Source: Octopus sinensis (lineage: Eukaryota). From it: DNA of 64,000 nt. This document shows, one piece after another, positions 7,927-64,000 of the stretch. The notes under the pieces were generated by a model, which was not told where the DNA came from, did no database searches, and saw only the letters and a program-made list of their open reading frames with translations. The position numbers were made by a program, and so were the translations under genes. The DNA lies in contig NC_043000.1 of the NCBI RefSeq assembly GCF_006345805.1, forward strand, positions 7,812,001 to 7,876,000, given 5' to 3'. How positions within the stretch are numbered: the first letter of the stretch is position 1; each line of letters opens with the position of its first letter.

Positions 7927-9202
7927 CTACTGTCCTGGTTATAAGTTACAGCTACAATATCCTTAACTGGACTCTAAATGAACTAATCAAAATAGACAGG
8001 AAAACAAGAAGAATAATGACTGGATTTAGGATGCACTACCCAAAATCTGACTTAGAAAGGTTATATATACAACGTATTGAAGGTGGTAGAGGCCTTATAT
8101 AACTAGAAAACAATTACAAAATAACCACCATAGGGCTACAGAAATACCTACTCCAGAAGCTAGGAAAACTAAATAAATAGCCAGAAAACATGAACAAAAC
8201 AAAAACGTTTTCAGTCTTTAAGGAAGCTGACAAATGCAAACAAGAAGTCATACTATCAAACTATGAAGAAAAAGAAGAATCAACGAAAGCTGTAAAACAA
8301 CTGAAATCCAAACTAAAACTAGAACAGCAACGGATCATGATAAAACGATGGCAAGAAAAGCCCCTTCATGGCAAATACTGGGTTAAACTAAACAGAAAAG
8401 AAATAGACAAAGAAAAATCCCAGCAATGGCTGAGAAGCTCAGGACTCAAAGCAGAAACAGAGGGATTTTTAATTGCAGCACAAAATCAAAGCCTTCCCTC
8501 TAGAAATTACCAAAAAAGAGACACAACAAGTAACTGCAGAATATGAGGAGATGGACAAGAAACAATAAATCATATCTCTGGCTGCCCAGTCCTGGCTAAG
8601 AAGGAATATATTTACAGAACAACTGAGTTGGGACCTATATACACTGGAAGTTATGCCAACATTATGGAATAACAACAGAAAAAAGATGGTATAGGCACAC
8701 ACCAGAAATGGTCACAGAAAACGAGAAAGCACCCATACTCTGGGATATGCCAATACACACAGATAGAGAAATTAAGACCAACAGACCAGATATAGTTGTC
8801 AGAGATCATGAAGAAAAAAAATGTTTTCTAATTGATGCATCAATACCAGCAGATGACAACATTTCTCTAAAAGAAATGGAGAAACTTTCAAAATACAAAG
8901 ACCTGGAAAACGAGGTAACTCGAATATGGAGTCTAAAAGCGGAAACAATTCCTATCATAGTAGGCACATTAAGTATGATAAAAAATATTCAGACAAATAC
9001 ATAACAGAAACACCAGGACTAGCAAGTATATATAACATACAGAAAATACCACTACAAGGCACTGCCCACATCCTACGTAAAGCACTTTCAATACAGTAAA
9101 AGTAAGAGCATCACAACAAACCACAGCACATACCCAAGGCACACGGAGCTGCGCTTGGTAGTGCAGTGAAAGCACATGATAAAAATAAGACTACTGAGTG
9201 AT

Positions 9203-9790: not shown

Positions 9791-10191
9791 CATCAATACA
9801 GCAACAGGGAAAGAACGAGAGAGGATAGGTGGAAGGCAGAGAAGGAGATAACATGTGGTTAGGTAGGCTGGCAGTGGGTGATGCAAATGTAGTGAATGAG
9901 GAGGGGGAATATGGGGAGTATGGTGGTGGAAGGGAGATAATTTGGTGGTTTGGAAGGGTGATCAATGTAAAATATGTGGGGAGAGAACATTAGAAATGAA
10001 AGATTTGTAACAGAGAAATGGTTCCTGGTAACAAGAGGAGGAAGTAGTATCAGGAAAAAATAACTGAAGGATGCAGTTCTGCTCACATTTAATTAGAGCA
10101 GAAGAATGGTGCAGATAAAGAGAGATGATGTATAAAGGGAATATCTTGAGGAAACTGGGCAGGATGTTTTATACATATGCTCACACACACA

Positions 10192-10357
10192 CATGTGCAT
10201 GCGTGAAGACGGGAAGGATGGCTTCCCTTTGCAAATACTGATAGGGCACAGAAAGTGTGTCTATAGCCAGCTGGAGGAGGTGTCCTCCTGGGGCTACAAA
10301 CTACAGTAGCATTCACCCTTAGGGGTTAGCCATATTCAAATGGCAAATATACGTCAC
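10192..10357 (+). mobile_element. HHR-family element, direct copy starting at the predicted cleavage site
   Basis: Homologous to the reverse complement of 63721-63893; terminal GCCAT-N6-ATGGC hairpin then TA array. Confidence 0.75.
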
Positions 10358-10390
10358 AATATATATATATATAGTTATGTATTTAATATG

Positions 10391-10447
<57 letters not shown>

Positions 10448-10448
10448 T

Positions 10449-10906
10449 GTGTGGTATACTTGCCATCTCAATATGGCTAACCAGTAAGGGTGGGTGTTAC
10501 TGTAGCCCCAGGAGAACATCGTCTCCAGCTGGCTTTAGGCACACTTTCTGTACCCTTATGGTATTTGCAAAGGGAGGTCATCCTTCCCTCGTCAACCTAA
10601 GTGATACGCATGGACTGCAGTTTCTAGGTATTGACCTGTCCTCAGTGTACGACAATCATCGGTTTTCGATGAAGGGGGTCCTAATGCAAATACTTATATC
10701 GTTTTTCTAGTAACTTTTCGTCACTGATCTCGAAAAACTGTCTGCAACTATAATAAATCTACAGGTTGACGAGGGAAGGATGACCTCCCTTTGAAAATAC
10801 CATAAGGGCACAGAAAGTGTGCTTAAAGTCAGCTGGAGACGACCTTCTTCTGGGACTACAAGCTACAGTAACACCCACCCTTACTGGTTAGCCATATTGA
10901 GATGGC
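10449..10906 (-). mobile_element. fold-back element: ~140-bp inverted arms (10462-10598 / 10763-10906) with a hammerhead in the spacer
   Basis: Arms are clear reverse complements; left end abuts (TA)n. Confidence 0.85.
10607..10651 (-). ncRNA. minimal type-I hammerhead ribozyme
   Basis: CGUACA-CUGAGGA-CAGG(UCAAUA)CCUA-GAA-ACUGCAGU-C-CAUGCG; palindromic stem III and GUC triplet. Confidence 0.75.
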
Positions 10907-12969
10907 TATTATACTTTACGTTGTCGAGCGGTTACTGTTTACATCTCGTTCAGAGATTTATTATATATATATATATAGTTATGTATTTAATATGTATGTA
11001 TAGATAGATAGATAGATAGATAGATTAATATATATAGATGGACAGACGGACAGACAGACAGATATAATTACCTGTCAAATAAATATTAGTTTTTGTGTCA
11101 TTAACGCAAAGAAAAAGCAATAGAAAATTATGGAACATAGGATGGGAGTCTTGTGTGACAGGCTGAGGTATTGCTTAGTGGATGATGGAGAATTCTTTGT
11201 GGAGAAATTGTTACTATAAAATATTCTGTTTTCCAGTGGTTGACTGATTTTTTTTTAACTCATAATAATCTGTGTTTATTTTTGGAATATATTTTAGATA
11301 TTGTTGTTTTCTAATTCAAACTGATAAAAATTTTACTTTCTTGCTGTGGGGAATATTTGTTTCTTAAATACATTATAGAAATTTATTTTAAGCATAAAAT
11401 TCTATGAAAATAGATTGTAGTTAGTCTGGGATATATATTCATCTCTATAAATACATTTTGGACATGGATTTCTTTTTTTAAATAGATTATGTTAAAATGG
11501 AAGGGTACTGATCACTTTGTGGGATGTTTAATCATAGGCTTTTTTCATTGGAAGATGATTTAAAGCTAATTTGGAAAATAATTTTAAAAGTAATTTTAAA
11601 ATGTTGTCTGTAATAAATTGTTTTAATATAGTAGTGTTGTGTGCATTTTGTATGACAATGTCTTGTGACCCAAACTGAAGGTCATCTGGTAAGGACTATT
11701 TAACATGGCTGCCCTTCCAGTGTTGAGAAGGTTCTTTCCTTTTGGACATGTCTTGCTTGTGGTGGCAGTTTTATTTGGCTATACTGTTGATTAAAGTCAG
11801 CAAATGTAAGGGGCTGTGTGATTGCTGATTTACTTTGATAAACACTTTACTGTGGGATTACATTAATTGATGTGAATTAGACCTTCTGTCAAGGATATTA
11901 AATACAATCAGTTTAGCAATAAATTGATTAGAAGCACGTTAAACTGTGACAATTGAAATGTAAGCATTTTCTACTGTGAAAACCGCTTAAATGTAAGAAG
12001 GGCAGTTCTTAGTAGGCTATAAACAATTGATTTGATGTCCATAGCTGATGAAGCATAGTGATGGAGAAATGCATGTTCTATGGTCTGATGACATCATTCA
12101 TGTCTCAGTGATGTGTTTTTCATACTCATTATTTATAAGGAAAATTTCTCTCCAGAGACAGGCTTTGCAGTGAAGGTTTTTCAATTTTTGTATGTGAAAT
12201 ACTATTGTACATACCTGTGGTTTGCAATAATAATTTCTTCTAATTGATAATATACAATGGTCAAAAGAAAATATTAATAGGTAACTTTTTAGGTGTGTGA
12301 GTGGGGATAGAATTATTTTGGTACTAAGGGTTAGGGTCTACCAAATATTTTTCTGAATATTTTTATACAACACATTTTTTAGAAACAACATTGAAGATCC
12401 CTAAAAAATTCTTTTAAAATACATTTAAAAAATTATTAAAATGATTCCTTCTTATGCATGATGCCAATGATCAAAAACCTTTGGTAGAAAAGTCTACATG
12501 AATTAAACCCCTGTATAAGCAACAATACAAAGACTAAATATATTTGATTCAATTCTTGAAAATGAGACTGTGAAGGTCTGGAAACCTCAAATATGGATTT
12601 AAGAACTCGACTGTTCCAAGCTAACAAGTTAAATGCTAATTGATAGTGAGAGAAGTAGTATTTGTAGCAAAAAAAAAACAAACAATCTTTAGAACATGGA
12701 ATAAGGTGTTTATTTACCATGAGAAGACCTCTCATGTGGACTCATGGTGCATAAAAGCACTCATATTTATGTTGCTGACAGAGGAGAACTGTGTTATGCA
12801 ACATCAAGTGATCTGGCAGAGGTCCTCTCAATGTAAATAATGCAGTATTCTGTGTTCTAATACGACATCCATGTTAAGTTGGATGTAAAAAATGTCTTTT
12901 GTAAAAAGCTGATAATATAAAAAATGGAAAATAAATGATAAAACTTGAACATAACCATGTATTCAATAC

Positions 12970-17110: not shown

Positions 17111-18237
17111 AAAGGTAACACCATTTCTGCTCAGATGAAATCTCAATTACACCTCCACTTCAGCTGCAGCTACTAATTCTTTCATTACCCCTTCTATCTC
17201 AAGCACCCTTACCACTGGTGTCATCACCTCTACTAAATCCATTTCTTCTCCTAAGCCACTATTATTGCCATTATGAATTCCTTCATTCTCTATTACCTGC
17301 ACTTAAGTCACTCCAGTGAAACTTTTTATTAAATAACTGAATTATGGAGTATTACAGATTTATCTAAGACAATAATACATGTAAAACTGCATGAGCACAT
17401 GCACGTTTATGCACTGATATATTTTTGCTTCAAGTTGAAGCAAATTTTTGAAACTTACCATTTATAAAGTTTCAGAATAATTTTTGTCTGTCGTATTTTT
17501 AAAAGTGGAAGAGATCAAAAGAGCAAAGATGTGCCATGAAGTTGAAAATGGATACGATTGCTAATTTTGTCTTTTGTCTCTTGTATTTGAGTTTGTAGAT
17601 ACGACAAGCGAAGGAGAAGATGAAGAAAAAGAAGGAAGAAAATAATAGCATCTTCTTTTATTAAGATACGATGTCTATCTGGTTTTTTTCAAATGTGTTT
17701 TTCCTGAGATTTATTTATAGTTTGATGTGAAAGAAAGAGAATAAAATGAGTTGCACTGAAAGACTGTATAAAGACAGGACAAACGAGAATAAAAAAGTTC
17801 CACATCCTGATCACAATCACGTTGTCATCATCATCATCACCATCACCACCACCACCATCATCATCATGATTATCATCATCATCACCATCATCATCACCAT
17901 CACCATCACCATCATCATCATCCTCATAGATGTTGTCATTTCAACGTCCACTTTTTCCTTACATGAAATTCATTGAGATAAATTTTCTGCAAACAGATGA
18001 CCCTACTGTTTGCCAACCCCTCTGCTGTTACCGAGTAAGGTAATACTTCTCCCTAAGTCTTTCAAACATGAATGTTCTGATATTTTTCTTATTTTTTTTT
18101 CTTGCACTTGTTAGACTATCATCAGTTACGGATTAAAAATCATATTTCATCAGACTTCTTGATTTAAGTTCTTTTGTTTCTAACTGGCCTAACAATGTTC
18201 CTTTGAACTTCTCACTTAGTTGAATACATACATACAT

Positions 18238-18325
18238 TCATCACCACCACCACCACCACCACCACCACCACCACCACCACCACCACCGCCCACCACCACC
18301 ACCACCACCACCACCACCACTACCA

Positions 18326-18386
<61 letters not shown>

Positions 18387-18392
18387 GTCATC
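18238..18392. repeat. (CAC)n(CAT)n array
   Basis: Direct observation. Confidence 0.9.
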
Positions 18393-18560
18393 ACCATTTA
18401 ATGCCCATTTTCCATGCTCGCATGGGTTGCATGGTTTGACTGGAGCTAGTAAACTGGGAAACTGCACCAGGTTCCAGTCTGATTTGGCTTGGTTTCTACA
18501 GCTGGGTGTCCTTCCTGACTGCAACCACTTTACAGTTTATTCCGAGTGCTTCTAGTGTGC
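18385..18560 (-). mobile_element. RTE-tail element, diverged
   Basis: Reverse complement of the 40700-40877 tail. Confidence 0.65.
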
Positions 18561-20991: not shown

Positions 20992-21192
20992 TCTTTTATT
21001 CCTTTACTTGTTTCAGTCATTTGCCTATGGCCATGCTGGAGCACTGACTTTTAGTTGAAGAAATTGACCTCTGGACTTATTCTTTGTAAGCCTGGGGCTT
21101 ATTCTATGGTCTCTTCTGCTGAACTGCTAAGTTAGGGGAATGTAAACACACCAGCATCAGTTGTCAAGTGATGGTGGTGGGGACAAACACAA

Positions 21193-21231
<39 letters not shown>

Positions 21232-21396
21232 TATATACGACAGGCTTCTTTCAGTTTCTATCTACCAAATTCACTTATAAGGCTTTGGTTGACCCAAGGC
21301 TATAGTAGAAGACACTTGCCCAAGATGCCCCACAGCAGGACTGAACCTGGAACCATGTAATTGGGAAGCAAGCTTCTTACCACACAGCCACGCATA
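20992..21396 (-). mobile_element. SINE family A
   Basis: Full head-to-tail copy. Confidence 0.85.
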
Positions 21397-21477
21397 CATA
21401 TATGCATACATATGTAACATGTCAATTTATATATACACTGTCATGCACACACATAAACATATGGATAAAAATGTGTA

Positions 21478-21882
21478 TTCTTTTACTTGTTTCAGTCATT
21501 TGACTGTGGCCAAGCTGGAGCACCACCTTTAGTCGAGCATATCGACCCCAGGACTTATTCTTTTGTTAACCTAGTACTTATTCTATTTGTCTCTTTTGCC
21601 AAACCGCTAAGTTATGCAGACGTAAATGCACCAGCATCAGTTGTCAAGTGATGTTGGGCATGACAAACACAGACACACAAACATATACGCACACATCCAT
21701 ACACACACATATAAATATATATATATGACAGGCTTCTTTCAGTTTCCATCGACGAAATCTCACAAGACTTTGGTTGGCTCGAGGCTATAGTAGAAGACAC
21801 TTGCCCAAGGTGCCACACAATAAAACTGAACCTGGAACCATGTGGTTGGTAAGCAAGCTACTTACCACACAGCCACTCCTGT
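21478..21882 (-). mobile_element. SINE family A
   Basis: Full head-to-tail copy. Confidence 0.85.
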
Positions 21883-24674: not shown

Positions 24675-25150
24675 TATATAAATTGAAGTCGATCAACATC
24701 AATGGAAATTGCAGCTGTGGTTAAGCGAACCATCCGATCGTGGTCGTTGCCAGCGCCGCCCCAACTGGCCTCCGTGCCTGTGACACGTAAAAGCACCATT
24801 CGCTCGTGTCTGTTGTCAGCCTCGCCTGGCCCCCGTGCCGGTGGCACATAGCACCATCCGTTCGTGGCCGTTGCCAGCCTCACCTGGACCCCGTGCCGGT
24901 GGCGCGTAAAAGCACCATCCGTTCGAGGCCGTTTGCCAGCTCCATCTGGCACCTGTGTGAGTGGCACGTAAAAAGCACCCACTACACTCACTGAGTGGTT
25001 GGCGTTAGGAAGGGCTTCCAGCCGTAGAAACACTGCCAGATCAGACTGGGCCTGATGCAGCCTTCTGGCCTCACAGACCCCAGTTGAACCGTCCAACCCA
25101 TGCTAGCATGGAAAGCGGATGCTAAATGATGATGATGAAGATGATGATGA
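24675..25150 (+). mobile_element. RTE-tail element with four stem-loop subrepeats
   Basis: Matches 40590-40877 and ends in (GAT)n. Confidence 0.85.
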
Positions 25151-28562: not shown

Positions 28563-30006
28563 TCATATTTTCTCATATTAGCAAAATGCTAAACATTTAG
28601 AGCCAGAAGGAATACAGTAAAATTAATCAACTTTAGTATTAGACTGGTACTTACATTAATGGTCCCAGAGATAGGAAAGTTAACTCACTCTAATATTTTT
28701 AAAGTGGGAATTGGCCATGCTAAAGCACCACCTTTAAGAGGTTTTAGTTGAAAAAAATCAAGCTCAGTACTTATTTTTAAAGTCAGGTACTTATTCTGTC
28801 AGTTACTTTTGTTGAACCACTAAGTTATGGGGAGGTGAAAAACAAACACTATGGGTTGTCAAGCAATAGAATGGAGGGGATGAAGACATAAACACACACA
28901 CAGACACACACACATACACACAGAGACCTCCCACACACACACACATTTAAGTCACTATATATAGATTCAAGTAATAAAGCTCCTTAATGTATCATTGTAC
29001 AAACCATATAGAATATATACTAATATACAAAAAAAAAAAATGGTAAGGAGTATGTATGTGAATTTGTATTTAACGAAGATTTCCTTTCACCTGACAATGT
29101 AGCCCAAATTCTGCATTATTTTGAATGAATTTTTGCATTTTGTAATAATGCAGACATGTAAGTAATTCATTTATTATTAAATGATTAAATGTAAGTTATT
29201 TGCATGTTTTTGAGTTTTGAAACAAATTTGTTGTTTTCAATGACTGAGCCATTTCATTGAAGTTACCATTTGTACCTAGTTTAAGCAGTTGACACCTCTT
29301 ATTTGCAATGGCTTTTTCACAGACTGTGTCATAAGCAAAGCTAAAGACCCAGTCTGCTTTTTGTTTTTAGGGAGCCATTGTCTTGATTTTAAATTCCTCA
29401 TCTAAAATAAACGATAATTGAGAAAACTACAAGGAAAATTAGAAATGGAGAAATATAAACAAAAACATCAAACTTTTCTACTTTTATATTACTTCAAACT
29501 TTTGTTTTTGCTTTCACTTCTTTATATTTCTACTTTGCATTGTCATGGCTTCACCAATTCCTTTTAATTCTCTTCCACAAAGCTGCAAATAAATTACATC
29601 ATATTAACACATAAGCTTTCCTTGAAGTTGATAATTTGTTTGATATTCCAAGCCGTAGCTACGTTGTCTATGTTTAAAATGATGCAGTCAATGTAGTCAT
29701 AAAATGTTTGAAATTAAAACATGTGGTTTCAACTCTGAAACAGAATTTTAGAAGTTATACTCATTCAATGGTTCTCAACTGTATTTTTAAGCTCAGTGCC
29801 ACCTTTTCACTGGATGACATTTTACAAATATCCTATTACCGCGTTTTATCAGTTAGTTTTTTAATCATTGGATTGTGGCCATGTTGCGCACTGCCTTGAA
29901 GGGATTAGTCACACAAATTAACTTGGTATTTAGTTTTTTTGAAATCTGGCACTTATCCTATTGGTCTCTTTTGCCAAAATGCTAAGTTATAGGAAAGTAA
30001 ACAAAA

Positions 30007-30415
30007 TAGGCGCAGGAGTGGCTGTGTGGTAAGTAGCTTGCTTACCAACCACATGGTTCCGGGTTCAGTCCCACTGCGTGGCATCTTGGGCAAGTGTTTT
30101 CTACTATAGCCTCGGGCCGACCAAAGCCTTGTGAGTGGATTTGGTAGACAGAAACTGAAAGAAGCCTGTTGTATTTATGTGTGTATATATATATGTATGT
30201 ATGTGTGTGTATTTATGTCTGTGTTTGTCCCCCCAGCATCACTTGACAACCGATGCTGGTGTGTTTACATCCCCGTAACTTAGCGGTTCGGCAAAAGAGA
30301 CCGATAGAATAAGTACTGGGCTTACAAAGAATAAGTCCTGGGGTCGATTTGCTCGGCTAAAGGCGGTGCTCCAGCATGGCCACAGTCAAATGACTGAAAC
30401 AAGTAAAGGAGTAAA
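30007..30415 (+). mobile_element. SINE family A (best-preserved copy), preceded by a minus-strand family A fragment at 29845-30005
   Basis: GGCGCAGGAGTGGCTGTGTGGTAAG head, GGTTCAGTCCC B-box, full tail. Confidence 0.9.
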
Positions 30416-31282: not shown

Positions 31283-31401
31283 AGGGCTTATATAATAGAA
31301 CTATAATACTGGACCGTGGTGCATCAGCACTCGTGTTTTAACTCACAGATGACAATGTCTGACTCATATTTTAATCTCAACAAGTATATTTTTAGAGATA
31401 T

Positions 31402-31820
31402 AGGCATAGGAGTGGCTGTGTGGTAAGTAGCTTGCTTACCAACCACATAGTTCTGGGTTCAGTCTCACTGTGTGGCACCTTGGGCAAGTGTCTTCTACTA
31501 CAGCCTCGGGCTGACCAAAGCCTTGTGAGTGGCTTTGGTAGACGGAAACTGAAAGAAGCCCGTCGTATATATGTATATATATATATATGTATGTGTGCGT
31601 GTATATGTTTGTGTGTCTGTGTTTGTCCCCCCAACATTGCTTGACAACTGATGCTGGTGTGTTTACGTCCCCGTAACTTAGTGGTTCAGCAAAAGAGACT
31701 GATAGAATAAGTACTAGTCTTCCAAAGAATAAGTCCTGGGATTGATTTGCTTGACTAAAGGCAGTGCTCCAGCATGGCCACTGTCAAATGACTGAAACAA
31801 GTAAAGGAGTAAAAGAGAGA
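31402..31820 (+). mobile_element. SINE family A
   Basis: Full copy. Confidence 0.9.
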
Positions 31821-33430: not shown

Positions 33431-34474
33431 ATATATATATATATATAGTGAGAATTTACAAAAAAGAAGATTTTTAGTATTAAAAATTCTTGTAAGTGTT
33501 GCTTCAGCTATGATGGAATTCTGAGACCCCCTTCGGATTGCACCTAGAAAGTTCCCCTCCCAGGTACAAGTCTGGGTTAGGTTGTTTATGGAAGACCAGC
33601 AGTCACCCATGCATACCGGCCTCCCCTCTCCATGCCACCAGTGTTATCCAAGGGGAAGACAACAGCCAATACAGCTTGGCACCTGTAACGTCAAGTACAA
33701 TATTCGACTTCGTTGAAACAGACCTTCACGCAAAGCAAATTAAATAAAATTTGGGATTTTTTGCGGAGGGTGAAAGTGGTAACAAGAACAGGACAGTGAG
33801 AACAAGACAGTAAAAACAAACGGTGAGGGATGTTAAGCGAAGACGATAGAAAAATTATTATGAATGCTAGGAAAACGAGCTTATGGAAGAAGACAGGTAT
33901 AAGCACGTGTCTTTAGGAAGGAAATGGGCAGAAAGATAGGTTCTCTTTTGTCACGTGTCAGCGATGAAAGAGTCAAGAAGGGAGAGTGAGAGAAAGGGAA
34001 TGGTGAAGAAGAGAGGAGAAGAATAGGGAAGGGTGGGAGAGAAAACCAGAAGGGATGAAAAACAAGAGAAGGAGAGAGATAGACAGAGAAGAGATAGTAG
34101 AGATAGAAGAAGAGTGCACATTGTAATTATTAAGATAAAACTTACACCTCTCCTTGTCTTGACATTGCACTATAATTATAAATGAAGCTCACGATCATAG
34201 TATTCTTTGTTTTCAGTCTTCTGTGAAAACGTATTTAGAGGAGACATTTTCCTTGCTTGAAACCAGGTGAATATTGGTAAAGAAAGGGCTGTAGAAACTT
34301 TGCTGCATCAAATTTCATATGACAGAAGTGGCTGTTGAAACAATGTTGGTGATAATGATGATGATGATGAGAATAAGTATTTTCTGATTGGCTAAATCTG
34401 ATTGAGGAAATATGGCAGGTGGAGACAATATCAAAATTTTAATTAATGAAAATTTATTACATAGGCTTATATAA

Positions 34475-34845
34475 GAGCAAGCATGACTGTGTGGTTAAGA
34501 GGCTTCTTTTGCAACCATGTAGTTCTGGGTTCAGTCCCACTACACAGCACCTTGGGCAAGTGTCTTCTACTATAGTTCTGGACTGACCAATGGCTTGTGA
34601 GTGGATTTGGTAGATGGAAAGAGTGTGGAAACCTGTCGTGCGTGTGTGTGTGTTTGTTTCCCACCATTTTTTGATAACCAGTATTGGTTTGTTTACATCC
34701 CCTAAACTTCACAGTTCAGCAAAAGAAACTGAATGAATAAGTACCAGTCTTAAAATAAGTACTGGGTTTGACTTGTTTGACTAAGTCCATCTTGGTGTTG
34801 CTTCAGTCTGGTGCAGTCGATTGACAGAAACAAGTAAAAGATAAA
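34475..34845 (+). mobile_element. SINE family A, diverged
   Basis: Head, core and tail recognisable. Confidence 0.8.
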
Positions 34846-37199: not shown

Positions 37200-37610
37200 A
37201 CTCTTACTCTTTACTTGTTTCAGTCATTTGACTGCGGCCATGCTGGAGATCGCCTTTAGTTGAGCAAATTGATCCCAGGACTTATTCTTTGTAAGCTTAG
37301 TACTTATTCTATCGGTCACTTTTGCCGAACTGCTAAGTTACAGGGACGTAAACACACCACCATCGGTTGTCAAGCGATGTTGGGGGAGACAAACACAGGC
37401 ACACAAACATATACACACACATACACACATATATATACATATATACGATGGGCTTCCTTCAGTTTCCATCTACCAAATCCACTTAAAAGGCTTTGGTCAG
37501 CCCGAGGTTATAGTAGAAGACACTTGCCCAAGGTTCCACGTAGTGGGACTGAACCCAGAACCATGTGGTTGGTAAGCAAGCTACTTACCACACAGCCACT
37601 CCTGTGCCTT
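37200..37610 (-). mobile_element. SINE family A
   Basis: Full copy. Confidence 0.9.
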
Positions 37611-38530
37611 ATATATAAGATGGGATGGGCACTGCTGGAAGATTTTTGATCAAAGGTCTGCTCCATCAATGGCTGACCTATGGCTAAACATCATCATCAT
37701 TTAACATTTGTTTTTCATGTTGGCATAGGTTGGATGGTTTGACCGGAACTTGTAGGGCCAGGCTCCATTGTCTGTTTTGGCACGGTTTCTATGGCTGGAT
37801 GCCCTTCCTAGCACCAGCCACTTCATGAGTGCTTTTCATGTGGCATCATCACCAGTTCTTTGTATGTGACCTAGCAAAAAAAGAAAAAAAACCCTCAGCT
37901 GGGAGGTAATATTGATGGGGAATGGATTTATGTGAGTTGATGAGAGATTAAAAGTATAGAGGGACAGGGATAGGTGACAGGCTGTAGAGTAGGTACATGG
38001 ATACCCCATATGGAAGATAAAGATAAAGAGAGTGGGTGAGTTAAAGAGTAAAATAGAGAGAGCAATAGTGATAGAGATGCTGGTGAAGATGTAATGAGAC
38101 TTGCCCTCAAGGGTCATTGAGGTCGGTGAGAATAAGTGGAGTGATGCAGAGGTTTGGACTGGGTGAGTGGATAGGTTGGAGGTGACTAAAACAAATGGAG
38201 GGAAATATAGGGGTGGGAGTTGTGGTTGTGTGTAAGGGCATTGAGGGTGATAGCAGATAAGGTGAAGTGTTACTCATGCAGGGAAGAAAAGGCACAGAAA
38301 GGAGTTGATTGGTGGAGACAGTAGGCAGGGAAGGAAGTGGAAGTGTTTGGAGGGGGGTAAGGAAACAAAATGGGGATGTATATGCACAAAAAAAGAAACC
38401 CTTTGGAATAGAAGATGAACTCTCTTCTTCTCATATTTGTGTTGCAATACAAGCAGTGTATTTTGATTAATTTTGGAAACCACGAAGAATTTAATAAAAT
38501 TATAACCTAGTCACCCGTATAGTCAACCAG

Positions 38531-40048
38531 GTGATACACGAAGGAGTCATACCCAATGACTGGTGCAGCAGCATACTAGTCAACTGCTACAAAGGTAAAG
38601 GTGATGCCCTAGATACAAATAATTACAGAGGTATCAAGCTGTTGGATCAAGTAATGAAGGTTACGGAGAGGGTCATAGCCCAACTAATTAGAGAGAGAGT
38701 TAGTTTAGATGAGATGCAGTTTGGGTTCGTGCCAGGAAAAAGTACCACTGATGCTATATTCCTGGTAAGGCAGCTGCAGGAGAAATACCTAGCCAAAGAT
38801 AAGCCCCTGTACCTGGCTTTCGTTGACATGGAGAAAGCTTTTGATAGGGTCCCCCGATCCCTTATCTGGTGGTCAATGAGGAAACTAGGGATAGATGAAT
38901 GGCTGGTGAGGACTGTGCAAGCCATGTACAGAGATGCCGTAAGTAAGGTTAGGGTTGGCAACATGTACACAGAAGAATTCAAAGTAGAGGTTGGGGTCCA
39001 CCAGGGTTCAGTACTCAGCCCCCTCCTATTTATCATAGTACTCCAGGCAATTACGGAGGAATTCAAGACAGGCTGTCCCTGGGAGCTCCTCTACGCTGAC
39101 GACCTTGCTCTTATTGCTGAGTCACTATCAGAACTGGAGGAGAAGTTCCAGGTGTGGAAGGAGGGTTTAGAATCAAGGGGCCTTAGAGTCAACCTAGCTA
39201 AAACCAAAGTACTAATAAGTAGAAAGGTAGACAATCCACAAATATCTTCAGGAAGATGGCCCTGCTCAATCTGTAGAAAAGGTGTAGGTAGAAACTCTAT
39301 AAGATGTACCCAGTGTAAGCTATGGACACATAAGAGGTGCAGCAATGTCAAAGGTAGGCTAACTGGGAAGATAGTTTTTGTATGTGGCAGATGCTCGGGA
39401 GCATTAACCTCCGAAAATCTGCAGAAAACAACTTCCGTCACTTTCCAGGGGGAAAAACTAGAAGTAGTTGATAGCTTCCGTTATCTAGGTGACCAAGTCA
39501 GTAGTGGGGGTGGGTGCGCTGAAAGTGTAACTGCTAGAATAAGAATAGCCTGGGCAAAGTTTAGGGAGCTCTTACCTCTGCTGGTGACTAAAGGCCTCTC
39601 GCTCAGAGTAAAAGGCAGACTGTATGATGCGTGTGTACGAACAGCCATGCTACATGGCAGCGAAACATGGGCTGTGACTGCTGAGGACATGCGTAAGCTC
39701 GTGAGGAATGAAGCCAGTATGCTCCGATGGATGTGTAATGTCAGTGTACATACTCGACAGAGCGTTAGCACCTTGAGAGAAATGTTGTACCTAAGAAGCA
39801 TCAGTTGTGGTGTGCAAGAGAGACGATTGCGCTGGTATGGTCATGTGGCGAGAATGGATGAAGATAGGTGTGTGAGAAAGTGCCAATCCCTAGCAGTTGA
39901 GGGAACCCGTGGAAGAGGTAGACCCAGGAAAACCTGGGACGAGGTGGTGAAGCACGACCTTCGAACTTTAGGCCTCACTGAGGAAATGACCAGAGACCGA
40001 GACCTTTGGAAATATTCTGTACGTGAGAAGACCAGGCAGGACAAGTGA
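38531..40048 (+). CDS. RTE reverse transcriptase (N-truncated, no APE) with PHD-like insertion
   Basis: YKGKGD...NYRGIKLL, QFGFVPGKSTTDAIF, AFVDMEKAFDRV, GVHQGSVLSPLLF, LYADDL, FRYLG, RLRWYGHVAR, RGRGRPRKTW. Confidence 0.9.
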   Translation: MIHEGVIPNDWCSSILVNCYKGKGDALDTNNYRGIKLLDQVMKVTERVIAQLIRERVSLDEMQFGFVPGKSTTDAIFLVRQLQEKYLAKDKPLYLAFVDMEKAFDRVPRSLIWWSMRKLGIDEWLVRTVQAMYRDAVSKVRVGNMYTEEFKVEVGVHQGSVLSPLLFIIVLQAITEEFKTGCPWELLYADDLALIAESLSELEEKFQVWKEGLESRGLRVNLAKTKVLISRKVDNPQISSGRWPCSICRKGVGRNSIRCTQCKLWTHKRCSNVKGRLTGKIVFVCGRCSGALTSENLQKTTSVTFQGEKLEVVDSFRYLGDQVSSGGGCAESVTARIRIAWAKFRELLPLLVTKGLSLRVKGRLYDACVRTAMLHGSETWAVTAEDMRKLVRNEASMLRWMCNVSVHTRQSVSTLREMLYLRSISCGVQERRLRWYGHVARMDEDRCVRKCQSLAVEGTRGRGRPRKTWDEVVKHDLRTLGLTEEMTRDRDLWKYSVREKTRQDK

Positions 40049-40134: not shown

Positions 40135-40592
40135 ACAGACACCCATCCCAACCCCCCATGCTTGCGAAGACATGTTGGGGCAAGCGAAATCGAGATCGAA
40201 ATCGAAACCGAATTGAACCAGCCAGGATCCCTGGCCTGGTGGTACGTAAAAAGCACTATCCGACTCGGGGCCGTGGCACGTAAAATACTCCAATGCGACC
40301 GTACGACAGGCACCCATGCCAACCCCCTTTGCTTGTGAAGACATGTTGGGGCAAGCGAAATCGAAATCGAATTGAACCAGCCAGGATCCCTGGTCTGGTG
40401 GTACGTAAAAAGCACTATCCGACTCGTGGCCGTGGCACGTAAAATACTCCAATGCGACCGTACGACAGGCACCCTTGCCAACCCCCTTTGCTTGTGAAGA
40501 CATGTTGGGGCAAGCGAAATCGAAATCGAATTGAACCAGCCAGGATCCCTGGTCTGGTGGTACGTAAAAAGCACTATCCGACTCGTGGCCGA
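40135..40592 (+). repeat. ~160-170-bp tandem repeat (about 2.7 copies) in the RTE 3' UTR
   Basis: GAAGACATGTTGGGGCAAGCGAAATCG at 40166, 40337 and 40496. Confidence 0.9.
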
Positions 40593-51829: not shown

Positions 51830-52730
51830 AGTAGCGTCCCTGCCTTCCTGAGCTAGTTTTCCACCACATTTCTTAAAAATCATGGTAGAGGTCTTGGTTT
51901 GGGACCACTCATGTCTAGAAACTGAGGTTGGAGGTAAGCAAGGGCATGCTCCCCATAGAAAATTCAGCCCTGAGAAAGCCTTATGACAATAGCAAAGAAG
52001 CATGGGCACCAGTCAGCCCAAAGGTTAGGGTGGGCTGCATCTGTCTACCTCAAAAAGGAAGATACAAACCCTCATCCTGGGTCATGCAAGCATGACATGC
52101 CTTATAATGGCTGACGGCCTGGGAAGAAGTTTGGAGTGAGGTAGGGAAGTTGGAATGTGGGTAGTGTGTGTGGAATGGGAACTGAGGTGCATGAGGAATT
52201 GAGGAGGAGGAGGGTAGATATGTGCTGTGTGCAGGAGGCTAGGTGGAGGGGTCAGGGTGCAAGATTTGTGGGGGTCAAGGGAAGAAGGTACAAGTTGTGG
52301 TGGTCAGGAAATGGCAAGGGGACTGAAGGTGTGGGAGTTTTGATGAAGGAAGAAATCTGTAAGAAAGTAGCAGAGGTCAGGAGAAAGAGTGACAGAGTGA
52401 TGACAGTAGTGTTAGCATTTGAGGAAGAAGTGGTGAAGGTGATTTGTGGGCATGGTTCGCAAAGTGGAAAAGGGATCGCTGAGTAAAAGCAGTTCTTTGA
52501 TGAAATGGTGAGTGAATGGGACTTACATAAGATAGAGGAATTGGTTCTGAGCATGGGTGATTTTAATGGATATGTTGGGAAATGGATTCAGAGCTTTGAG
52601 GGGGTGCATGGGGGGAAATGGAATTGGGGAGAGAAATAAGGAAGGAAGGATGCTGTTGGAGTTTTGTGATGAGAAGGAGTTGTGTGTGACGAACACAGGG
52701 TTTAGGAAAACAAAGAAAAGGAAAGTGATG
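51830..52730 (+). pseudogene. RTE LINE 5' UTR and APE endonuclease, with stop and frameshift
   Basis: NVGS...VDMCCVQEARWRG...GVGVL...SDRVM...GDFNG...NKEGRMLLEFC...NTGF. Confidence 0.85.
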
Positions 52731-53765
52731 ATGATGATGAGGAGGATATATAACTTCACCTCTCACACTCTAATGAACTTACCCACCTGTTCTTCCCAAT
52801 CCTCTGTTCCTACTCTTTCTTCTATTCCCTTTTTTATACCTTGAGGATATTCCCTGACAGTTTGTCACAGCCTTCTTTGTCTCTCTTTCCAGCTACTCCC
52901 ACTCACCCTTATATAATGTGGGGTAACCATGTACTTCCTCTATAGCTTGGCACATGTTCCTATCTCTCTATAATAGTTTAGCTTCTCAACACTTGGCATT
53001 AAGCTACCCTTCCTTCCACTTTACTACATCCTAACTCAGTTGAGAGGGCATTTTGTTTTCTTGCAGGTTACTTGGTGACCTCCCTAGTGCTGGTGTCCCA
53101 TAAAATGCACCCAGTGCATTCTGTAAAGTGGTTGGTATTAGAAAAAGTATCCAGCCATAGAAACCATGCCAACACATTTTTCCAATTCGCCAGATTCTGT
53201 CAAACTGTCCAGTCCATTGCACATGGAATACAAATGTTAAAGTATGATGATGATGATGATGATGATAACAAAAACGATGATAATCTGAGTTAGGAATTTG
53301 TAGATTCCATTCCATTTCAACTCAAACCTTCCATTTGCATCCAACTTTCTATCACTTATAATCTGTCTTATATATATTTTGTACATCTGCTGGAAGTTTA
53401 GTTTCCTATAATTTTGATAAAGCAGCTTAGGATGAGGCTACATTTCCATTTACAGTATTCGGCTTAACATAAACATGTCATGGCTTGTCTCCAAGACTTG
53501 TTGGAAAAATGAACAAAATAGAAGAAAAATCATATTAGTCATCACCATCTGTTTCTTTTTTTCTCAACAGGATAGTCCCTCTGCATAGCCTACAACATGC
53601 TGGGTATCAGAGGAGCCAGTAAGTAGTAGACCATCTAATTACTTATGCCAGTAACAAAGTTTGTTTTAAAGGGGCTGTAGACGAAGAGGTCAGGGTGTGT
53701 GACTCCTAGCAGGAGTAGCCTGTAAGAAACTAATTGCATGCATGCATACATACATACATACATAC

Positions 53766-56899: not shown

Positions 56900-57530
56900 C
56901 TCTTTAGTCTTTTACTTGTTTCAGTCATGTGACTGTGGTCATGCTGGAGCACAGCCTTTAGTCGAGCAAATCGACCCCAGGACTTACTCTTTGTGAGCCT
57001 AGTACTTATTCTATCAGTCTCTTTGGCTGAACTGCTAAGTTACAGGGACGTAAACACACCAGCATCAGTTGTCAAGTAATGTTGGTGGGACAAACACAGA
57101 CGCACAAACATATACACACACATATAGATCGTAGGGTGAGATGCCATGCTTGAGGAGACATATAAATTCAAGTAGATCAAAATCAAATGGAAATTGTAGT
57201 TGTGATCCCTGTGCTGGTGGCATGTGAAAACACCATCCGCATGTGGCTGATGCCAGCGCTGCCTTGACTGGCTTCCATGCCGGTGGCATGTAAAAAGCAC
57301 CAACTGATAGTGGTCGTTGCCAGACCCTCTGGCCCCTGTGCCAGTGGTACGTAAAAAGCACCCACTACACTCTAGGAGTGGTTGGCGTTAGGAAGGGCAT
57401 CCAGCCGTAGAAACTCTGCCAGATCAAACTGGAGCCTGGTGCAGCCCTTGGCTTCCCAGACCCCAGTCGAACTGTCCAACCCATTCCAGCATGGAAAACG
57501 GACGTTAAACAATGATGATGATGAGGAGGA
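56900..57530. mobile_element. SINE family A 3' half (-, to about 57125) adjoining an RTE-tail element (+, 57130-57530)
   Basis: Both parts match copies elsewhere in the window. Confidence 0.8.
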
Positions 57531-59269: not shown

Positions 59270-59890
59270 TAGTTTGGTCAGTTAAGCACCGTTTGTGAGA
59301 AAAACAGCACTATAACGCAATTCACTCTGCCAGAAATATTGAAACAACTTGCTGTAGTGCTTGGCATTCTCACCGGAAGCTCCAATACAAACGTTTCAGA
59401 GTGTTTGGGTGTCAATCTGAGGACAGTGCATGTATCAAGAATGATAAAAATCAAACATCCACTCAACATTATGATGTTTGGCGGGGTCACTAGTGATGGT
59501 GACATTATTCCTCCATTCATCTTCCCACATGGCCTCAGACTCAACATGGAGGCCTACATCAAGTATCTGGAGGAGGTGGTGCTGCCTTGGGTTAAGAGGG
59601 TGGCTGCTGGAAGACCTTATGTCTGGCAACAGGACTCTGCACTGTGTCACACAAACAGGAGAACCCAGTCATGGCTGTCAAACAATTTCTACCACCACAT
59701 CATCCCTAACATTGTCGAAAGTTGTCTGGAGGCCGTGATTGAAGCCAAGAACAATTTTATTGAATAAATTTACTCTTTAGCATTTCACGATATTTTTATG
59801 TAATTTTGGTAAATATATCTATTAAAATGAGATGTCTGTGTTATTTTCATTTTTGCATAATTTAGATGACAATATATTCACTGCACCCTA
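59270..59890 (+). mobile_element. internally deleted Tc1/mariner (maT/DD37D-like) transposon; 142-aa ORF 59339-59767
   Basis: HTH fragment (LGVNLRTV), KHPLNIMMFGGVT..G, YIKYLEEVVLPW, GRPYVWQQDSA..H, TQSWL and CLEAVIEAK; WPP.SPDLNP motif missing. Confidence 0.8.
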
Positions 59891-60784: not shown

Positions 60785-61200
60785 ATCTTGTAAAAAAAAT
60801 GCATGCCTATGTGGTAAGAAGCTTGCTTCCCAACCACACAGTTCTGGGTTCAGTCCCACTGCATGGCACCTTGGGCAAGTGTCTTCTAAGATAGCCTTGG
60901 GCTGACCAAAGCCTTGTGAGTGGATTTGGTAGATGGAAACTGAAAGAAGCCTGTCGTATATATATATATATATATATTTATGCGTATGTGTCTTTGTGTC
61001 TGTCACCCCACCATTGCTTAACAACTGATGGCGGTGTGCTTATGTCCTTGTAACTTAGTGGTTTGGCAAAGTGACCAATAGAATAAGTGCTAGGCTTACA
61101 AGGAATAAACCCTGGGGTCGGTTTCTTTGACTAAAATCCTTTAAGGTAGTGCTCCAGTATGGCAGCAGTCAAATGACTGAAGACCTGTAAAAGAATAAAA
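60785..61200 (+). mobile_element. SINE family A
   Basis: Full copy. Confidence 0.88.
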
Positions 61201-62212: not shown

Positions 62213-62244
<32 letters not shown>

Positions 62245-62250
<6 letters not shown>

Positions 62251-62470
62251 CCTGCTGGGTTTGGCTGCTCTACATTGATAAGGGGCAAATACCCAAAAAC
62301 TAGTCTGCAGATGCCTGACCAGCAAGGGGAAGATGCTGACCTCCCCTGTTTGAAGGTTATAATGGACACAGGTTTGTTTGTCACATAGCTAGCTAGAGGC
62401 AATGACCACTTGGAGCTAATCAACGGCAGCATTCATCCTATATTTCTGGGCTGCCATATTAGCTTGGTGA
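62245..62470 (+). mobile_element. diverged member of the HHR/TA-targeting family
   Basis: GACCTCCC...GGACACAG...AGCTAGAG...GCAGCATTCATCC...GCCATATT resembles 10763-10906; TA arrays on both sides. Confidence 0.6.
62269..62311 (+). ncRNA. degenerate minimal hammerhead
   Basis: UCUACA-UUGAUAA-GGGG(CAAAUA)CCCA-AAA-ACUAGU-C-UGCAGA. Confidence 0.55.
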
Positions 62471-62829
62471 TAACTATTAATATATATATAATGTCAGATC
62501 GTGCTTGGGTACTACTGGTAACATGTAACCCAGTACAACTGTTGCATGGTCGGGATGTTGGTAACTAAACTGGCAACACCATCAAGCTTGGTGAGGAGAG
62601 TGATTGTTGGACACCCTGCGGGATGAAAAATAAGACCTGTCAAAAGGCAGATGAACTCATGAGCAGTCAACAGCCATCCAACAATATGTGTATGTATGTA
62701 TGTATGCGTGGGGTCTTGGAAACTACCTAGGTTGGTTTCCAGGCATGTGGTTGGCCCACTAGGAGTGGGAGGTCCCTCTCTTGTCACAACATCTCTCTAG
62801 GTGATGGAAGCTCCGAGAGAAAATCTGCT

Positions 62830-63720: not shown

Positions 63721-64000
63721 AAAGTGACGCATATTTGCCATTTGAATATGGCTAACCCCTAAGGGTGGATGCTACTGTAGTTTGTAGCCCCAGGAAGATA
63801 TCTCCTCCAGCTGGCTATAGACACTCTATCTGTGCCCTCTCAGTATTTGTGAAGGGAAGTCATCCTCCCCGTCTTCAACTCATGATACACATGGACTCGA
63901 GTTTCAAGGTATTGACCTATCATCGGCGTGTGACAATCATAGTTGTCGATGAGAAGTCAGCTCCCTTCACAAATACATATACTTTTTCCAGTGTCGATTG
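63721..64000 (-). mobile_element. HHR/TA-targeting family element, runs off the window edge
   Basis: Homologous to 10449-10700; terminal hairpin at 63737-63752 next to a TA array. Confidence 0.8.
63888..63932 (-). ncRNA. minimal type-I hammerhead (U4>C in this copy)
   Basis: CACACG-CCGAUGA-UAGG(UCAAUA)CCUU-GAA-ACUCGAGU-C-CAUGUG. Confidence 0.7.

What the first reader, a model, noticed from the sequence alone, without database searches (positions are those of the whole stretch)
10607..10651. Hammerhead ribozyme inside an apparent MITE, with covariation across three divergent copies
Seen: the fold-back spacer reads on the minus strand stem I-CUGAGGA-stem II-GAA-ACUGCAGU-C-stem I. Homologous positions read GAA-ACUCGAGU-C at 63888-63932 and AAA-ACUAGU-C at 62269-62311. 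Stem III differs in each copy yet is always a perfect palindrome followed by the GUC cleavage triplet. Stem I also covaries (CGUACA/CAUGCG, CACACG/CAUGUG, UCUACA/UGCAGA), and several of its mismatches fit CpG decay. Known: Penelope-like elements carry minimal type-I HHRs with short palindromic stem III that cleave as dimers. Inference: this is an ORF-less, ribozyme-processed retroelement family (PLE-parasitic or retrozyme-like), not a DNA MITE, and may be uncatalogued.
Basis: partly seen in the sequence, partly recalled or inferred. Interest (0 to 1): 0.88.

Follow-up and report, generated by a model that had tools for sequence, protein, structure and literature searches.

The report
Decayed hammerhead ribozymes in a retroelement
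Three diverged copies of a small self-cleaving RNA motif (a hammerhead ribozyme) sit in a short repeat that was copied through RNA, in the manner of Penelope-like elements; this is a real but already familiar kind of animal-genome parasite, and the copies here look mostly dead.

Summary
The minus strand of 10607-10651 reads as a complete type-I hammerhead: stem I, CUGAGGA, a 4-bp helix II, GAA, the palindrome ACUGCAGU, then C. A generic descriptor hits only this site in 64 kb and none of 300 shuffles. Stems I, II and III covary.

Only copy 1 has an intact core. Copy 2 has U4->C. Copy 3 has the known U3/A8 core variant but G12->A. No Rfam hammerhead model scores any copy.

The "MITE" is not a DNA transposon. 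It is a head-to-head pair: one unit carrying the ribozyme and one inverted, 5'-truncated partner. Their arms are 93.6% identical, and a perfect 40-bp target duplication flanks the pair. One partner carries an extra 47-nt tail. Other copies are truncated at different 5' points, and 3' ends abut (TA)n. These are published hallmarks of Penelope-like element (PLE) insertion.

Best reading: decayed pseudo-LTR-like or non-autonomous PLE-type units. Their master copies use a ribozyme that works as a dimer.

Not shown: that the family lacks an ORF, that cleavage occurs, or that the family is uncatalogued. It is a new member of a known kind, of modest interest.

The parts
10607..10651 (-). Hammerhead copy 1. 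All 12 core positions are intact (C3 U4 G5 A6 G8 A9 G12 A13 A14 A15.1 U16.1 C17). Helix II is AGGU/ACCU with a C.A mismatch at its base. Helix III is AC-UGCA-GU. The predicted cut is after C at 10613/10612. Stem I has 4 of 6 pairs.
10652..10762 (-). 5' region of unit B. The part at about 10656-10694 pairs with the start of the 3' arm and extends stem I by about 40 bp. The proximal ~68 nt is shared with copy 2.
10443..10606 (-). 3' arm of unit B, ending in the hairpin GCCATATTGAGATGGC (10477-10462) and AAGTATACCACAC.
10399..10442 (.). (TA)n tract between the left target duplication and the 3' end of unit B.
10763..10915 (+). Arm A: an inverted partner copy, 5'-truncated at AGGTTGACG, 14 nt downstream of the predicted cut site. 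It has no hammerhead. It is 93.6% identical to arm B.
   Evidence: (I1, I4)
10916..10962 (+). Extra 47-nt 'tail' beyond the usual 3' end, present only on arm A. It is unique in the window. Its last 12 nt (AGATTTATTATA) recur at the 5' edge of unit B.
10359..10398 (.). Left copy of the 40-bp target-site duplication: ATATATATATATATAGTTATGTATTTAATATGTATGTATA.
10963..11002 (.). Right copy of the 40-bp target-site duplication, identical to the left copy.
10204..10358 (+). Solo arm C. It is 92% identical to the arm of copy 2 and has no hammerhead core. Homology begins at about CATGTG (~10190), at or near the predicted cut site, right after a (CA)n run.
63888..63932 (-). Hammerhead copy 2. The core has U4->C (CCGAUGA). 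The base of helix II is U.U. Helix III is AC-UCGA-GU. Stem I has 5 of 6 pairs.
63724..63887 (-). 3' arm of copy 2, followed by TTTATACA(TA)n.
63933..64000 (-). 5' region of copy 2, forming the left strand of a strong ~40-bp extension of stem I. It is cut by the end of the window.
62269..62311 (+). Hammerhead copy 3, the oldest. It has the U3/A8 core variant and G12->A. Helix II is GGG/CCC with loop CAAAUA. Helix III is ACUAGU. Stem I has 5 of 6 pairs.
62312..62474 (+). 3' arm of copy 3, 73-76% identical to the other arms.
62240..62268 (+). Short 5' region of copy 3, which pairs with the start of its own arm. The copy is 5'-truncated about 30 nt upstream of the ribozyme. A candidate 16-nt duplication, TATTAATATATATATA, lies at 62211-62226 and 62475-62490.

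Best explanation
These are decayed genomic copies of a short retroelement unit of about 320-360 nt. The unit resembles the pseudo-LTR of a Penelope-like element (PLE) or a non-autonomous derivative of one. Its sense strand carries a type-I hammerhead ribozyme at the tip of a long hairpin.

Inferred mechanism in the master copies. Transcripts carry the ribozyme. Its helix III (2 bp plus a palindromic tetraloop) is too weak to fold alone. Two ribozyme copies therefore pair through the 8-nt palindrome and cut after GUC. The released RNA runs from the cut site to the 3' hairpin. A PLE-type reverse transcriptase/endonuclease nicks (TA)n targets and copies the RNA from its 3' end.

When both target strands prime synthesis, the result is a head-to-head pair with both 3' ends facing outward, an optional tail on one side, and one target duplication around the whole. 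That is what lies at 10359-11002.

Shown here: the motif, its covariation, the polarity of 5' truncation, the 40-bp duplication, the inverted sister copy, and the (TA)n association.

Inferred: cleavage, dimer action, and the PLE as the mobilising enzyme.

After insertion the copies decayed neutrally, largely at CpG sites, so those in this window are probably inactive or barely active.
For: The motif is unique in the window and absent from shuffles.

The three homologous copies keep all three helices. Six pairs change on both sides, and the slid controls are far lower.

Copy 3 carries U3/A8, a core covariation already described in Schistosoma PLE hammerheads.

A 2-bp helix III with a palindromic tetraloop, and a U.U mismatch at the base of helix II, are both described for retrozyme hammerheads of invertebrates and axolotl.

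The ribozyme lies on the sense strand as defined by the shared 3' end and the variable 5' ends.

Arms A and B are 93.6% identical to each other and 81-86% identical to other copies.

A perfect 40-nt direct repeat flanks the pair. None of 3000 background window pairs reached 40 nt.

Three of the five 3' ends lie 2-13 nt from a (TA)>=6 run, while 5% of random positions lie within 30 nt of one.

Published PLE anatomy matches: heavy 5' truncation, an adjacent inverted 5'-truncated copy, an optional 30-40 bp tail at one end, and a (TA)n target bias. The PLE enzyme cleaves and extends both target strands.

In all three copies the flanks of the ribozyme pair into a roughly 40-bp extension of stem I. 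Palindromes at the 5' ends of pLTRs are reported for PLEs.
Against: No Rfam hammerhead model matches any copy, even at E<=10 on 91 nt.

The G10.1-C11.1 pair, which Cervera and de la Pena call highly conserved, is absent from all three copies.

Only one copy has an intact core, and that copy has two mismatches in stem I next to the core. Its monomer hammerhead fold scores +0.5 kcal/mol against an MFE of -8.2.

The evidence rests on three sequences. One compensatory pair can be explained by two CpG decays.

No PLE reverse transcriptase or GIY-YIG ORF was found. The only clear RT is LINE-type with a PHD finger. A hand-picked subset of the other ORFs of at least 70 aa gave no Pfam hit.

The 40-bp duplication is longer than the 8-10 bp reported for Adineta PLEs.

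No further copies could be fetched from any collection.
Confidence: 0.65

Rival explanations
1. The copies are the ordinary 5'-truncated 3' ends (solo pseudo-LTRs) of an autonomous Penelope-like element (PLE), not a separate ORF-less family. The ribozyme is simply the pLTR hammerhead of that element.
For: PLE insertions are heavily 5'-truncated, solo pLTRs are common, and the hammerhead lies in the pLTR. Neither long copy can be followed upstream. Unit B is cut by its inverted partner at 10762, and copy 2 is cut by the end of the window.
Against: No PLE ORF is in the window. The last 12 nt of the tail recur at the 5' edge of unit B. This hints at a short, circularly permuted or tandem unit of about 360 nt. 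That is only one 12-nt match.
Confidence: 0.3
2. The family is a SINE-like retroposon that carries a hammerhead, as Schistosoma Sm-alpha does, and is mobilised by a LINE that recognises the 3' hairpin and the (TA)n tail. No PLE is involved.
For: The 3' hairpin GCCAT...ATGGC is conserved, with (TA)n at the 3' end. LINE fragments are in the window: the RT ORF at 38498-40045 (Pfam RVT_1) and, by eye only, endonuclease-like ORF fragments at 52145-52841 (the one tested, 52551-52841, gave no Pfam hit). 5' truncation and long duplications also fit LINE target-primed reverse transcription.
Against: The head-to-head pair consists of two copies of the same 3'-terminal segment, both with their 3' ends facing outward. 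LINE twin priming instead inverts a different, upstream part of the RNA. An optional tail on one partner is described as unique to PLEs. No 3' similarity to the window's LINE was seen.
Confidence: 0.15
3. The element is a DNA fold-back or MITE, and the hammerhead-like spacer is a chance resemblance.
For: Long inverted arms (98 nt at 92% and 53 nt at 96% complementary). No Rfam hammerhead hit.
Against: A 40-bp duplication is far beyond those made by DDE transposases. Single-arm copies with variable 5' ends exist: arm C and copy 3. The inverted partner is truncated and lacks the centre. The motif is absent from shuffles and covaries across copies.
Confidence: 0.04
4. The conserved feature is the long hairpin (a palindrome at the 5' end of the unit), used for priming or as a promoter. 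The hammerhead core at its tip never cleaved in this lineage and is a non-catalytic relic.
For: The extended stem is present in all three copies. PLE pLTRs have 5' palindromes. In the Anolis PLE, hammerhead cleavage was not needed for insertion in vitro, and no reads began or ended at the cut site. The 10.1/11.1 pair is never Watson-Crick here.
Against: Helix III keeps its palindrome through a GC-to-CG swap, and helix II covaries. Neither helix is part of the large hairpin. Copy 3 keeps the paired U3/A8 core change.
Confidence: 0.15

Closest known systems
Hammerhead ribozymes in the pseudo-LTRs of Penelope-like elements (Cervera & de la Pena 2014, PMC4209133; Craig et al. 2021, PMC8557442; Arkhipova et al. 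2013, PMC3846280)
   Same: Type-I topology; a short palindromic helix III that implies action as a dimer; U3/A8 core covariation in one copy; paired motifs or copies on opposite strands; heavy 5' truncation; an inverted 5'-truncated partner; an optional tail of about 30-47 nt on one side; insertion at (TA)n; a palindrome at the 5' part of the unit.
   Different: Helix II is 4 bp, not the 6-8 bp of the min-HHRs. There is no G10.1-C11.1 pair and no single bulged nucleotide 5' of helix II. The duplication is 40 bp against 8-10 bp in Adineta. No PLE ORF is seen nearby.
Metazoan non-LTR retrozymes with type-I hammerheads (Cervera & de la Pena 2020, PMC7229834; Li et al. 2026 preprint, 10.64898/2026.07.22.740005)
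   Same: [quoted passage not shown]
   Different: Retrozymes are defined by tandem repeats with a ribozyme in each unit. No tandem array of this unit is in the window. Copies here are dispersed, truncated or inverted. Circular RNA was not tested.
Schistosoma Sm-alpha SINE-like hammerhead repeats (cited in PMC4209133; loop sequence recalled from memory)
   Same: A dispersed short retroposon with a type-I hammerhead in which stem I continues past an internal loop. Loop 2 of copy 3 reads CAAAUA, which I recall as the canonical metazoan loop 2. I did not verify this.
   Different: Sm-alpha ribozymes have G10.1-C11.1 and are active. The copies here are degenerate and show PLE-type insertion anatomy.

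Membership tests
Hammerhead ribozyme (type I) | Conserved core: C3 U4 G5 A6 N7 G8 A9 ... G12 A13 A14 ... A15.1-U16.1, H17 | tested here: met
   Copy 1 has all positions. Copy 2 fails at U4 (C). Copy 3 has the known U3/A8 variant but A12. The majority consensus of the three copies has the full core.
Hammerhead ribozyme (type I) | Three helices around the core, with helices II and III closed and helix I open | tested here: met
   81.8% of cells are paired and six pairs change on both sides; slid controls give 11-50%. Stem I extends into a roughly 40-bp hairpin.
Hammerhead ribozyme (type I) | G10.1-C11.1 closing pair of helix II | tested here: not met
   The pair is C.A, U.U and G.A in the three copies. 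A U.U at this position is documented in about 60,000 axolotl HHR_Amex2 motifs, so this weakens but does not exclude membership.
Hammerhead ribozyme (type I) | Match to curated covariance models (Rfam Hammerhead families) | tested here: not met
   No hammerhead hit at gathering score on the window, nor at E<=10 on 551 nt, 91 nt or 1.8 kb.
Hammerhead ribozyme (type I) | Site-specific self-cleavage after H17 | not testable with these tools
   Needs in vitro transcription. The monomer hammerhead fold is unfavourable (+0.5 against an MFE of -8.2 kcal/mol), while the helix III self-duplex is -11 kcal/mol.
Penelope-like element insertion (pLTR or non-autonomous derivative) | Variable 5' truncation with a common 3' end | tested here: met
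   Five copies share the 3' arm. Their 5' ends lie at the start of the arm (A), near the cut site (C), about 30 nt upstream of the ribozyme (copy 3), and at least 68-111 nt upstream (copy 2, B).
Penelope-like element insertion (pLTR or non-autonomous derivative) | An adjacent inverted 5'-truncated copy (head-to-head) inside one target duplication | tested here: met
   Arms A and B are 93.6% identical. A perfect 40-nt direct repeat flanks both.
Penelope-like element insertion (pLTR or non-autonomous derivative) | An optional 30-40 bp 'tail' at one end | tested here: inconclusive
   A 47-nt extension follows arm A only. With a single instance I cannot show that it is encoded by the element.
Penelope-like element insertion (pLTR or non-autonomous derivative) | Microsatellite, (TA)n, target bias | tested here: met
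   Three of five 3' ends lie 2-13 nt from (TA)>=6 runs, against 5% of random positions within 30 nt. The bias is published for Naiad PLEs and proposed for Neptune PLEs.
Penelope-like element insertion (pLTR or non-autonomous derivative) | A cognate PLE RT plus GIY-YIG endonuclease that shares the terminal sequences | tested here: not met
   None was found in the window. The only RT is LINE-type, RVT_1 plus PHD, and a hand-picked subset of the other ORFs of at least 70 aa gave no Pfam hit. The rest of the genome could not be searched.
Non-LTR retrozyme | Tandem repeats with a type-I hammerhead in each unit | tested here: not met
   Tandem Repeats Finder finds no array of this unit. Only three ribozyme copies exist in the window, and they are dispersed.
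Non-LTR retrozyme | Expression as small circular RNAs | not testable with these tools
   No transcriptome is available.
MITE / DNA fold-back transposon | Terminal inverted repeats with fixed ends and a short (2-10 bp) duplication | tested here: not met
   The duplication is 40 bp. Single-arm copies exist, and the inverted partner is truncated.

The most novel reading that the evidence does not exclude
This is an uncatalogued, ORF-less unit of about 360 nt that depends on a PLE, in what is probably an octopod genome. Its hammerhead caps a 40-bp hairpin. Some genomic copies begin at the ribozyme cut site; arm C starts at CATGTG, the first bases after GUC. If that pattern holds genome-wide, it would be direct genomic evidence that hammerhead cleavage sets the 5' end of the RNA that PLE enzymes copy. 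That point is still open, because cleavage was dispensable for the Anolis PLE in vitro.
Probability: 0.15. Interest if true: 0.55.

Novelty: new member of a known kind. Interest (0 to 1): 0.33.

Why it matters
Type-I hammerheads with a palindromic helix III are already known by the thousands in invertebrate genomes, inside PLE pseudo-LTRs and retrozymes. The existence of this family would not surprise a specialist.

Its value is as a clean, fully resolved example. One locus shows the whole PLE-style insertion signature around a ribozyme-bearing unit: priming from both strands, a head-to-head pair, a tail on one side, a 40-bp duplication and a (TA)n target.

It also shows that an apparent MITE can be a retroelement artefact, which matters for repeat annotation.

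If 5' ends cluster at the GUC site genome-wide, the family could test whether hammerhead cleavage takes part in PLE-type retrotransposition in vivo.

Tried and rejected
Rfam. I scanned the whole window at gathering score, and three sub-regions at E<=10. No hammerhead family matched. The hits were microsatellite artefacts (mir-297, RUF21 and similar).

Getting more copies from outside the window all failed:
- A profile of the open antisense frame of the arms against 5.8 billion proteins gave nothing.
- The exact pattern AGGTCAATACCTNGAAACT in viral contigs gave one chance match with no ribozyme context.
- GGTTAGCCATATTSARATGGC in metagenomes gave two chance matches inside a bacterial gene.
- The arm pattern in viral contigs, and the arm pattern and an extended HHR pattern (AGGTCAATACCTNGAAACTNNAGTC) in GTDB genomes, gave nothing.

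Sampling the same genome through its LINE RT also failed. The best database relatives are only 74-76% identical and lie on contigs of 1.5-2.7 kb, so the species is not represented.

Rejected idea: a second, stem-II-deleted hammerhead on the plus strand at about 10717-10760 belonging to arm A. Homology between A and B stops at AGGTTGACG, and the covariance model finds nothing there. That stretch belongs to the 5' region of unit B.

Rejected idea: the 40-nt repeat is part of a segmental duplication of arm plus flank. Arms C and A are only 81% identical, while the flanks are 100% identical.

There are no tRNA-like heads and no tandem array of the unit.

Full report
**1. The observation**

The minus strand of 10651->10607 reads CGUACA CUGAGGA C AGGU CAAU ACCU A GAA ACUGCAGU C CAUGCG. 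This is a complete type-I hammerhead layout:
- the stem I 5' strand;
- the C3-A9 box;
- a 4-bp helix II with a tetraloop;
- G12 A13 A14;
- a helix III that can form only 2 bp plus a UGCA tetraloop as a monomer, but is an 8-nt perfect palindrome;
- C17;
- the stem I 3' strand.

Site 63932->63888 (minus) reads CACACG CCGAUGA U AGGU CAAU ACCU U GAA ACUCGAGU C CAUGUG. Site 62269->62311 (plus) reads UCUACA UUGAUAA GGGG CAAAUA CCCA AAA ACUAGU C UGCAGA.

I wrote a generic descriptor requiring the core, at least 3 bp in helix II, a palindromic A...U helix III, a non-G at position 17, and at least 4 of 6 stem I pairs. It hits only the first site in 64 kb and none of 300 dinucleotide-preserving shuffles. 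With one core mismatch allowed and the U3/A8 variant accepted, it hits exactly the three cited sites. Shuffles then average 0.16 hits and never reach three. The descriptor was written after I had seen the motif, so these numbers are an upper bound on significance. Even so, the coincidence of three hits with three homologous positions of one repeat family is not chance.

**2. Covariation**

On a gap-corrected alignment of the three copies, the hammerhead structure pairs 81.8% of cells. When the 3' partners are slid by 1-3 columns, the figure is 11-50%. Six of 15 pairs change on both sides:
- four in stem I, including one position that is G-C, A-U and C-G in the three copies;
- one in helix II (A-U to G-C);
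- the central GC-to-CG swap, which keeps helix III palindromic.

Between copies 1 and 2, identity in the ribozyme (about 81%) equals that of the arms (81%). The copies are therefore decaying neutrally. The compensated differences are best read as differences between the active source elements of two subfamilies.

CpG observed/expected is 0.32, with TG/CA at 1.33. Restoring CpGs gives a perfect 6-bp stem I, CGCACG/CGUGCG. The same effect weakens one of the 'compensatory' pairs, because two CpG decays can turn G-C into A-U.

**3. What argues against an active ribozyme here**

- Only copy 1 has every core nucleotide. Copy 2 has U4->C and copy 3 has G12->A.
- In copy 1 the two stem I pairs next to the core are A.C and C.A.
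- The 10.1/11.1 pair is C.A, U.U and G.A.
- No Rfam hammerhead model matches at gathering score, or at E<=10 even on a 91-nt stretch.
- The monomer hammerhead fold of copy 1 scores +0.5 kcal/mol against an MFE of -8.2, while the helix III self-duplex is worth -11 kcal/mol.

Two of these oddities have precedents:
- U3/A8, as in copy 3, is a core covariation reported in about 1,300 Schistosoma PLE motifs.
- A U.U mismatch at the base of helix II, with a 2-bp helix III plus tetraloop 'similar to invertebrate HHRs', describes about 60,000 axolotl retrozyme ribozymes.

I conclude that the motif descends from a real hammerhead and that the copies in this window are relics.

**4. The family and the 'MITE'**

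BLAST and nhmmer find five copies of an arm of about 160 nt and nothing else:

| Copy | Coordinates (strand) | Hammerhead |
|---|---|---|
| B | 10440-10714 (-) | yes |
| A | 10763-10915 (+) | no |
| C | 10204-10358 (+) | no |
| copy 2 | 63715-63995 (-) | yes |
| copy 3 | 62250-62487 (+) | yes |

A covariance model built from the three ribozymes, run with filters off, finds only those three.

All copies share the 3' end, a conserved hairpin GCCAT-loop-ATGGC followed by AAATATACGTCAC. They differ at the 5' end:
- A starts at AGGTTGACG, 14 nt after the predicted cut;
- C starts at about CATGTG, the first bases after GUC. This boundary is ambiguous because a (CA)n run abuts it;
- copy 3 starts about 30 nt upstream of the ribozyme;
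- B and copy 2 run at least 111 and 68 nt upstream.

A common 3' end with variable 5' truncation is the signature of target-primed reverse transcription. The ribozyme lies on the sense strand defined by that polarity.

**5. The fold-back locus**

Arms A and B are 93.6% identical to each other but only 81-86% identical to C and copy 2. C and copy 2 are 92% identical to each other. A and B are therefore sisters from one source.

The pair is flanked by a perfect 40-nt direct repeat, ATATATATATATATAGTTATGTATTTAATATGTATGTATA, at 10359-10398 and 10963-11002. None of 3000 random pairs of flanking windows shared 40 nt.

It is not part of a duplicated arm-plus-flank block, because the arms next to the two repeat copies (C and A) are only 81% identical. 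It is therefore a target-site duplication around a single insertion of two head-to-head copies, both with their 3' ends facing outward.

A carries an extra 47 nt (10916-10962) between its usual 3' end and the duplication. B has a (TA)n tract there instead.

Copy 3 is flanked by a 16-nt repeat, which is weaker evidence (1.6% background).

Three of the five 3' ends lie 2-13 nt from a (TA)>=6 run, while 5% of random positions lie within 30 nt of one.

**6. Comparison with the literature**

Every one of these features is described for Penelope-like elements (PLEs):
- a high degree of 5' truncation;
- an inverted 5'-truncated copy immediately adjacent, forming inverted repeats;
- a 30-40 bp tail at one end;
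- duplications obscured by a strong bias for (TA)n;
- in Adineta, direct plus inverted pLTRs head-to-head inside one duplication, a 31-bp tail on one of the inverted pLTRs, palindromes at pLTR 5' ends, and pLTRs sufficient for mobilisation in trans;
- an enzyme that cleaves and extends both target strands, with the tail explained by two reverse-transcription start sites;
- hammerheads located in the pLTRs.

LINE twin priming would invert a different part of the RNA, not a second copy of the same 3' end. DDE transposons do not make 40-bp duplications. The 40 bp is longer than the 8-10 bp reported for Adineta, and that difference is unexplained.

**7. The hairpin**

In all three copies the sequence upstream of the ribozyme pairs with the start of the arm. 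The duplex energies are -44, -29 and -22 kcal/mol, and the z-score is -5.5 for copy 2. Stem I (6 bp) therefore continues, past a small internal loop, into a helix of about 40 bp with the ribozyme core at its tip. Copy 3 does this with a different sequence.

**8. What is not established**

- I could not show that the family is ORF-less. B is cut by its partner and copy 2 by the end of the window. The copies may be solo pLTRs of an autonomous PLE.
- No PLE ORF is in the window. The 505-aa RT at 38531-40048 is LINE-type with a PHD finger. A hand-picked subset of the other ORFs of at least 70 aa gave no Pfam hit.
- The last 12 nt of the tail (AGATTTATTATA) recur at the 5' edge of unit B. This would fit a permuted or tandem unit of about 360 nt, but it is a single short match.
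- There is no tandem array, so the defining feature of a retrozyme is not met here.
- No outside copies were found. The species is not represented in the protein collection, where the best RT relatives are 74-76% identical.
- From memory only, one of the other repeats in the window resembles a repeat I associate with octopus genomes. I could not verify this.

**9. Verdict**

Its sub-claims are unproven: that the family is ORF-less, that it is processed by the ribozyme, and that it is uncatalogued. This is a new member of a well-known kind, and the copies seen are probably inactive. Interest is modest.

Noticed in passing
window 10190-10215 (+): The 5' end of solo arm C coincides, within about 2 nt, with the predicted ribozyme cut site (…(CA)n|CATGTGCATGCG-TGAAGACGG, against GUC|CAUGUG in copy 2). 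It could be a cDNA of a cleaved RNA. It could equally be a copy whose core was deleted between the two stem I strands.
   Followed up: partly
window 10951-10965 (+) and 10774-10755 (-): The 12-mer AGATTTATTATA ends the 47-nt tail of arm A and also starts the 5' region of unit B. This would fit a circularly permuted or tandem master unit of about 360 nt. It is a single match in AT-rich sequence.
   Followed up: partly
window 38498-40045 (+): A 505-516 aa open LINE-type reverse transcriptase with a PHD/C1-like zinc finger after the RT domain. The closest database relatives are 74-76% identical and lie on short contigs, one of them labelled as a bacterial MAG (Herbaspirillum), which is probably animal contamination. 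Named relatives are from Hydractinia, Mercenaria and Branchiostoma at 51-59%.
   Followed up: partly
window 40197-40591 (-/+), also 24758-24979 and 57043-57387: A tandem array of a 159-nt unit (2.5 copies, 98% identical) lies directly downstream of the LINE RT. Related 58-nt repeats occur elsewhere. All translate to recurring 'LPNANHSVSVVGAFYVP'-like frames. It may be a 3' UTR satellite of the LINE or a separate SINE.
   Followed up: no
window 20997-21876; also about 930-1650, 29956-30174, 31395-31783, 34460-34715, 37260-37650, 60758-61039, 63113-63400: A very abundant short interspersed repeat with at least 8 copies, including a 485-nt near-tandem pair. Copies end in microsatellites. ARAGORN finds no tRNA-like head. 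From memory it resembles a repeat I associate with octopus genomes; I did not verify this.
   Followed up: no
whole window: There is strong CpG depletion (observed/expected 0.32, TG/CA 1.33) and an extreme microsatellite load: 42 (TA)>=6 runs, many (CA)n and (TACA)n runs, and a (CCN)n tract at about 18220-18400. GC content is 36.5%.
   Followed up: partly
window 59273-59764 (+), 52145-52841 (+), 8181-9001 (+): By eye these are fragments of other mobile elements: a mariner/Tc1-like transposase C-terminus, LINE AP-endonuclease pieces, and another retrotransposon ORF remnant. None passed Pfam at E<=0.01 as fragments.
   Followed up: partly
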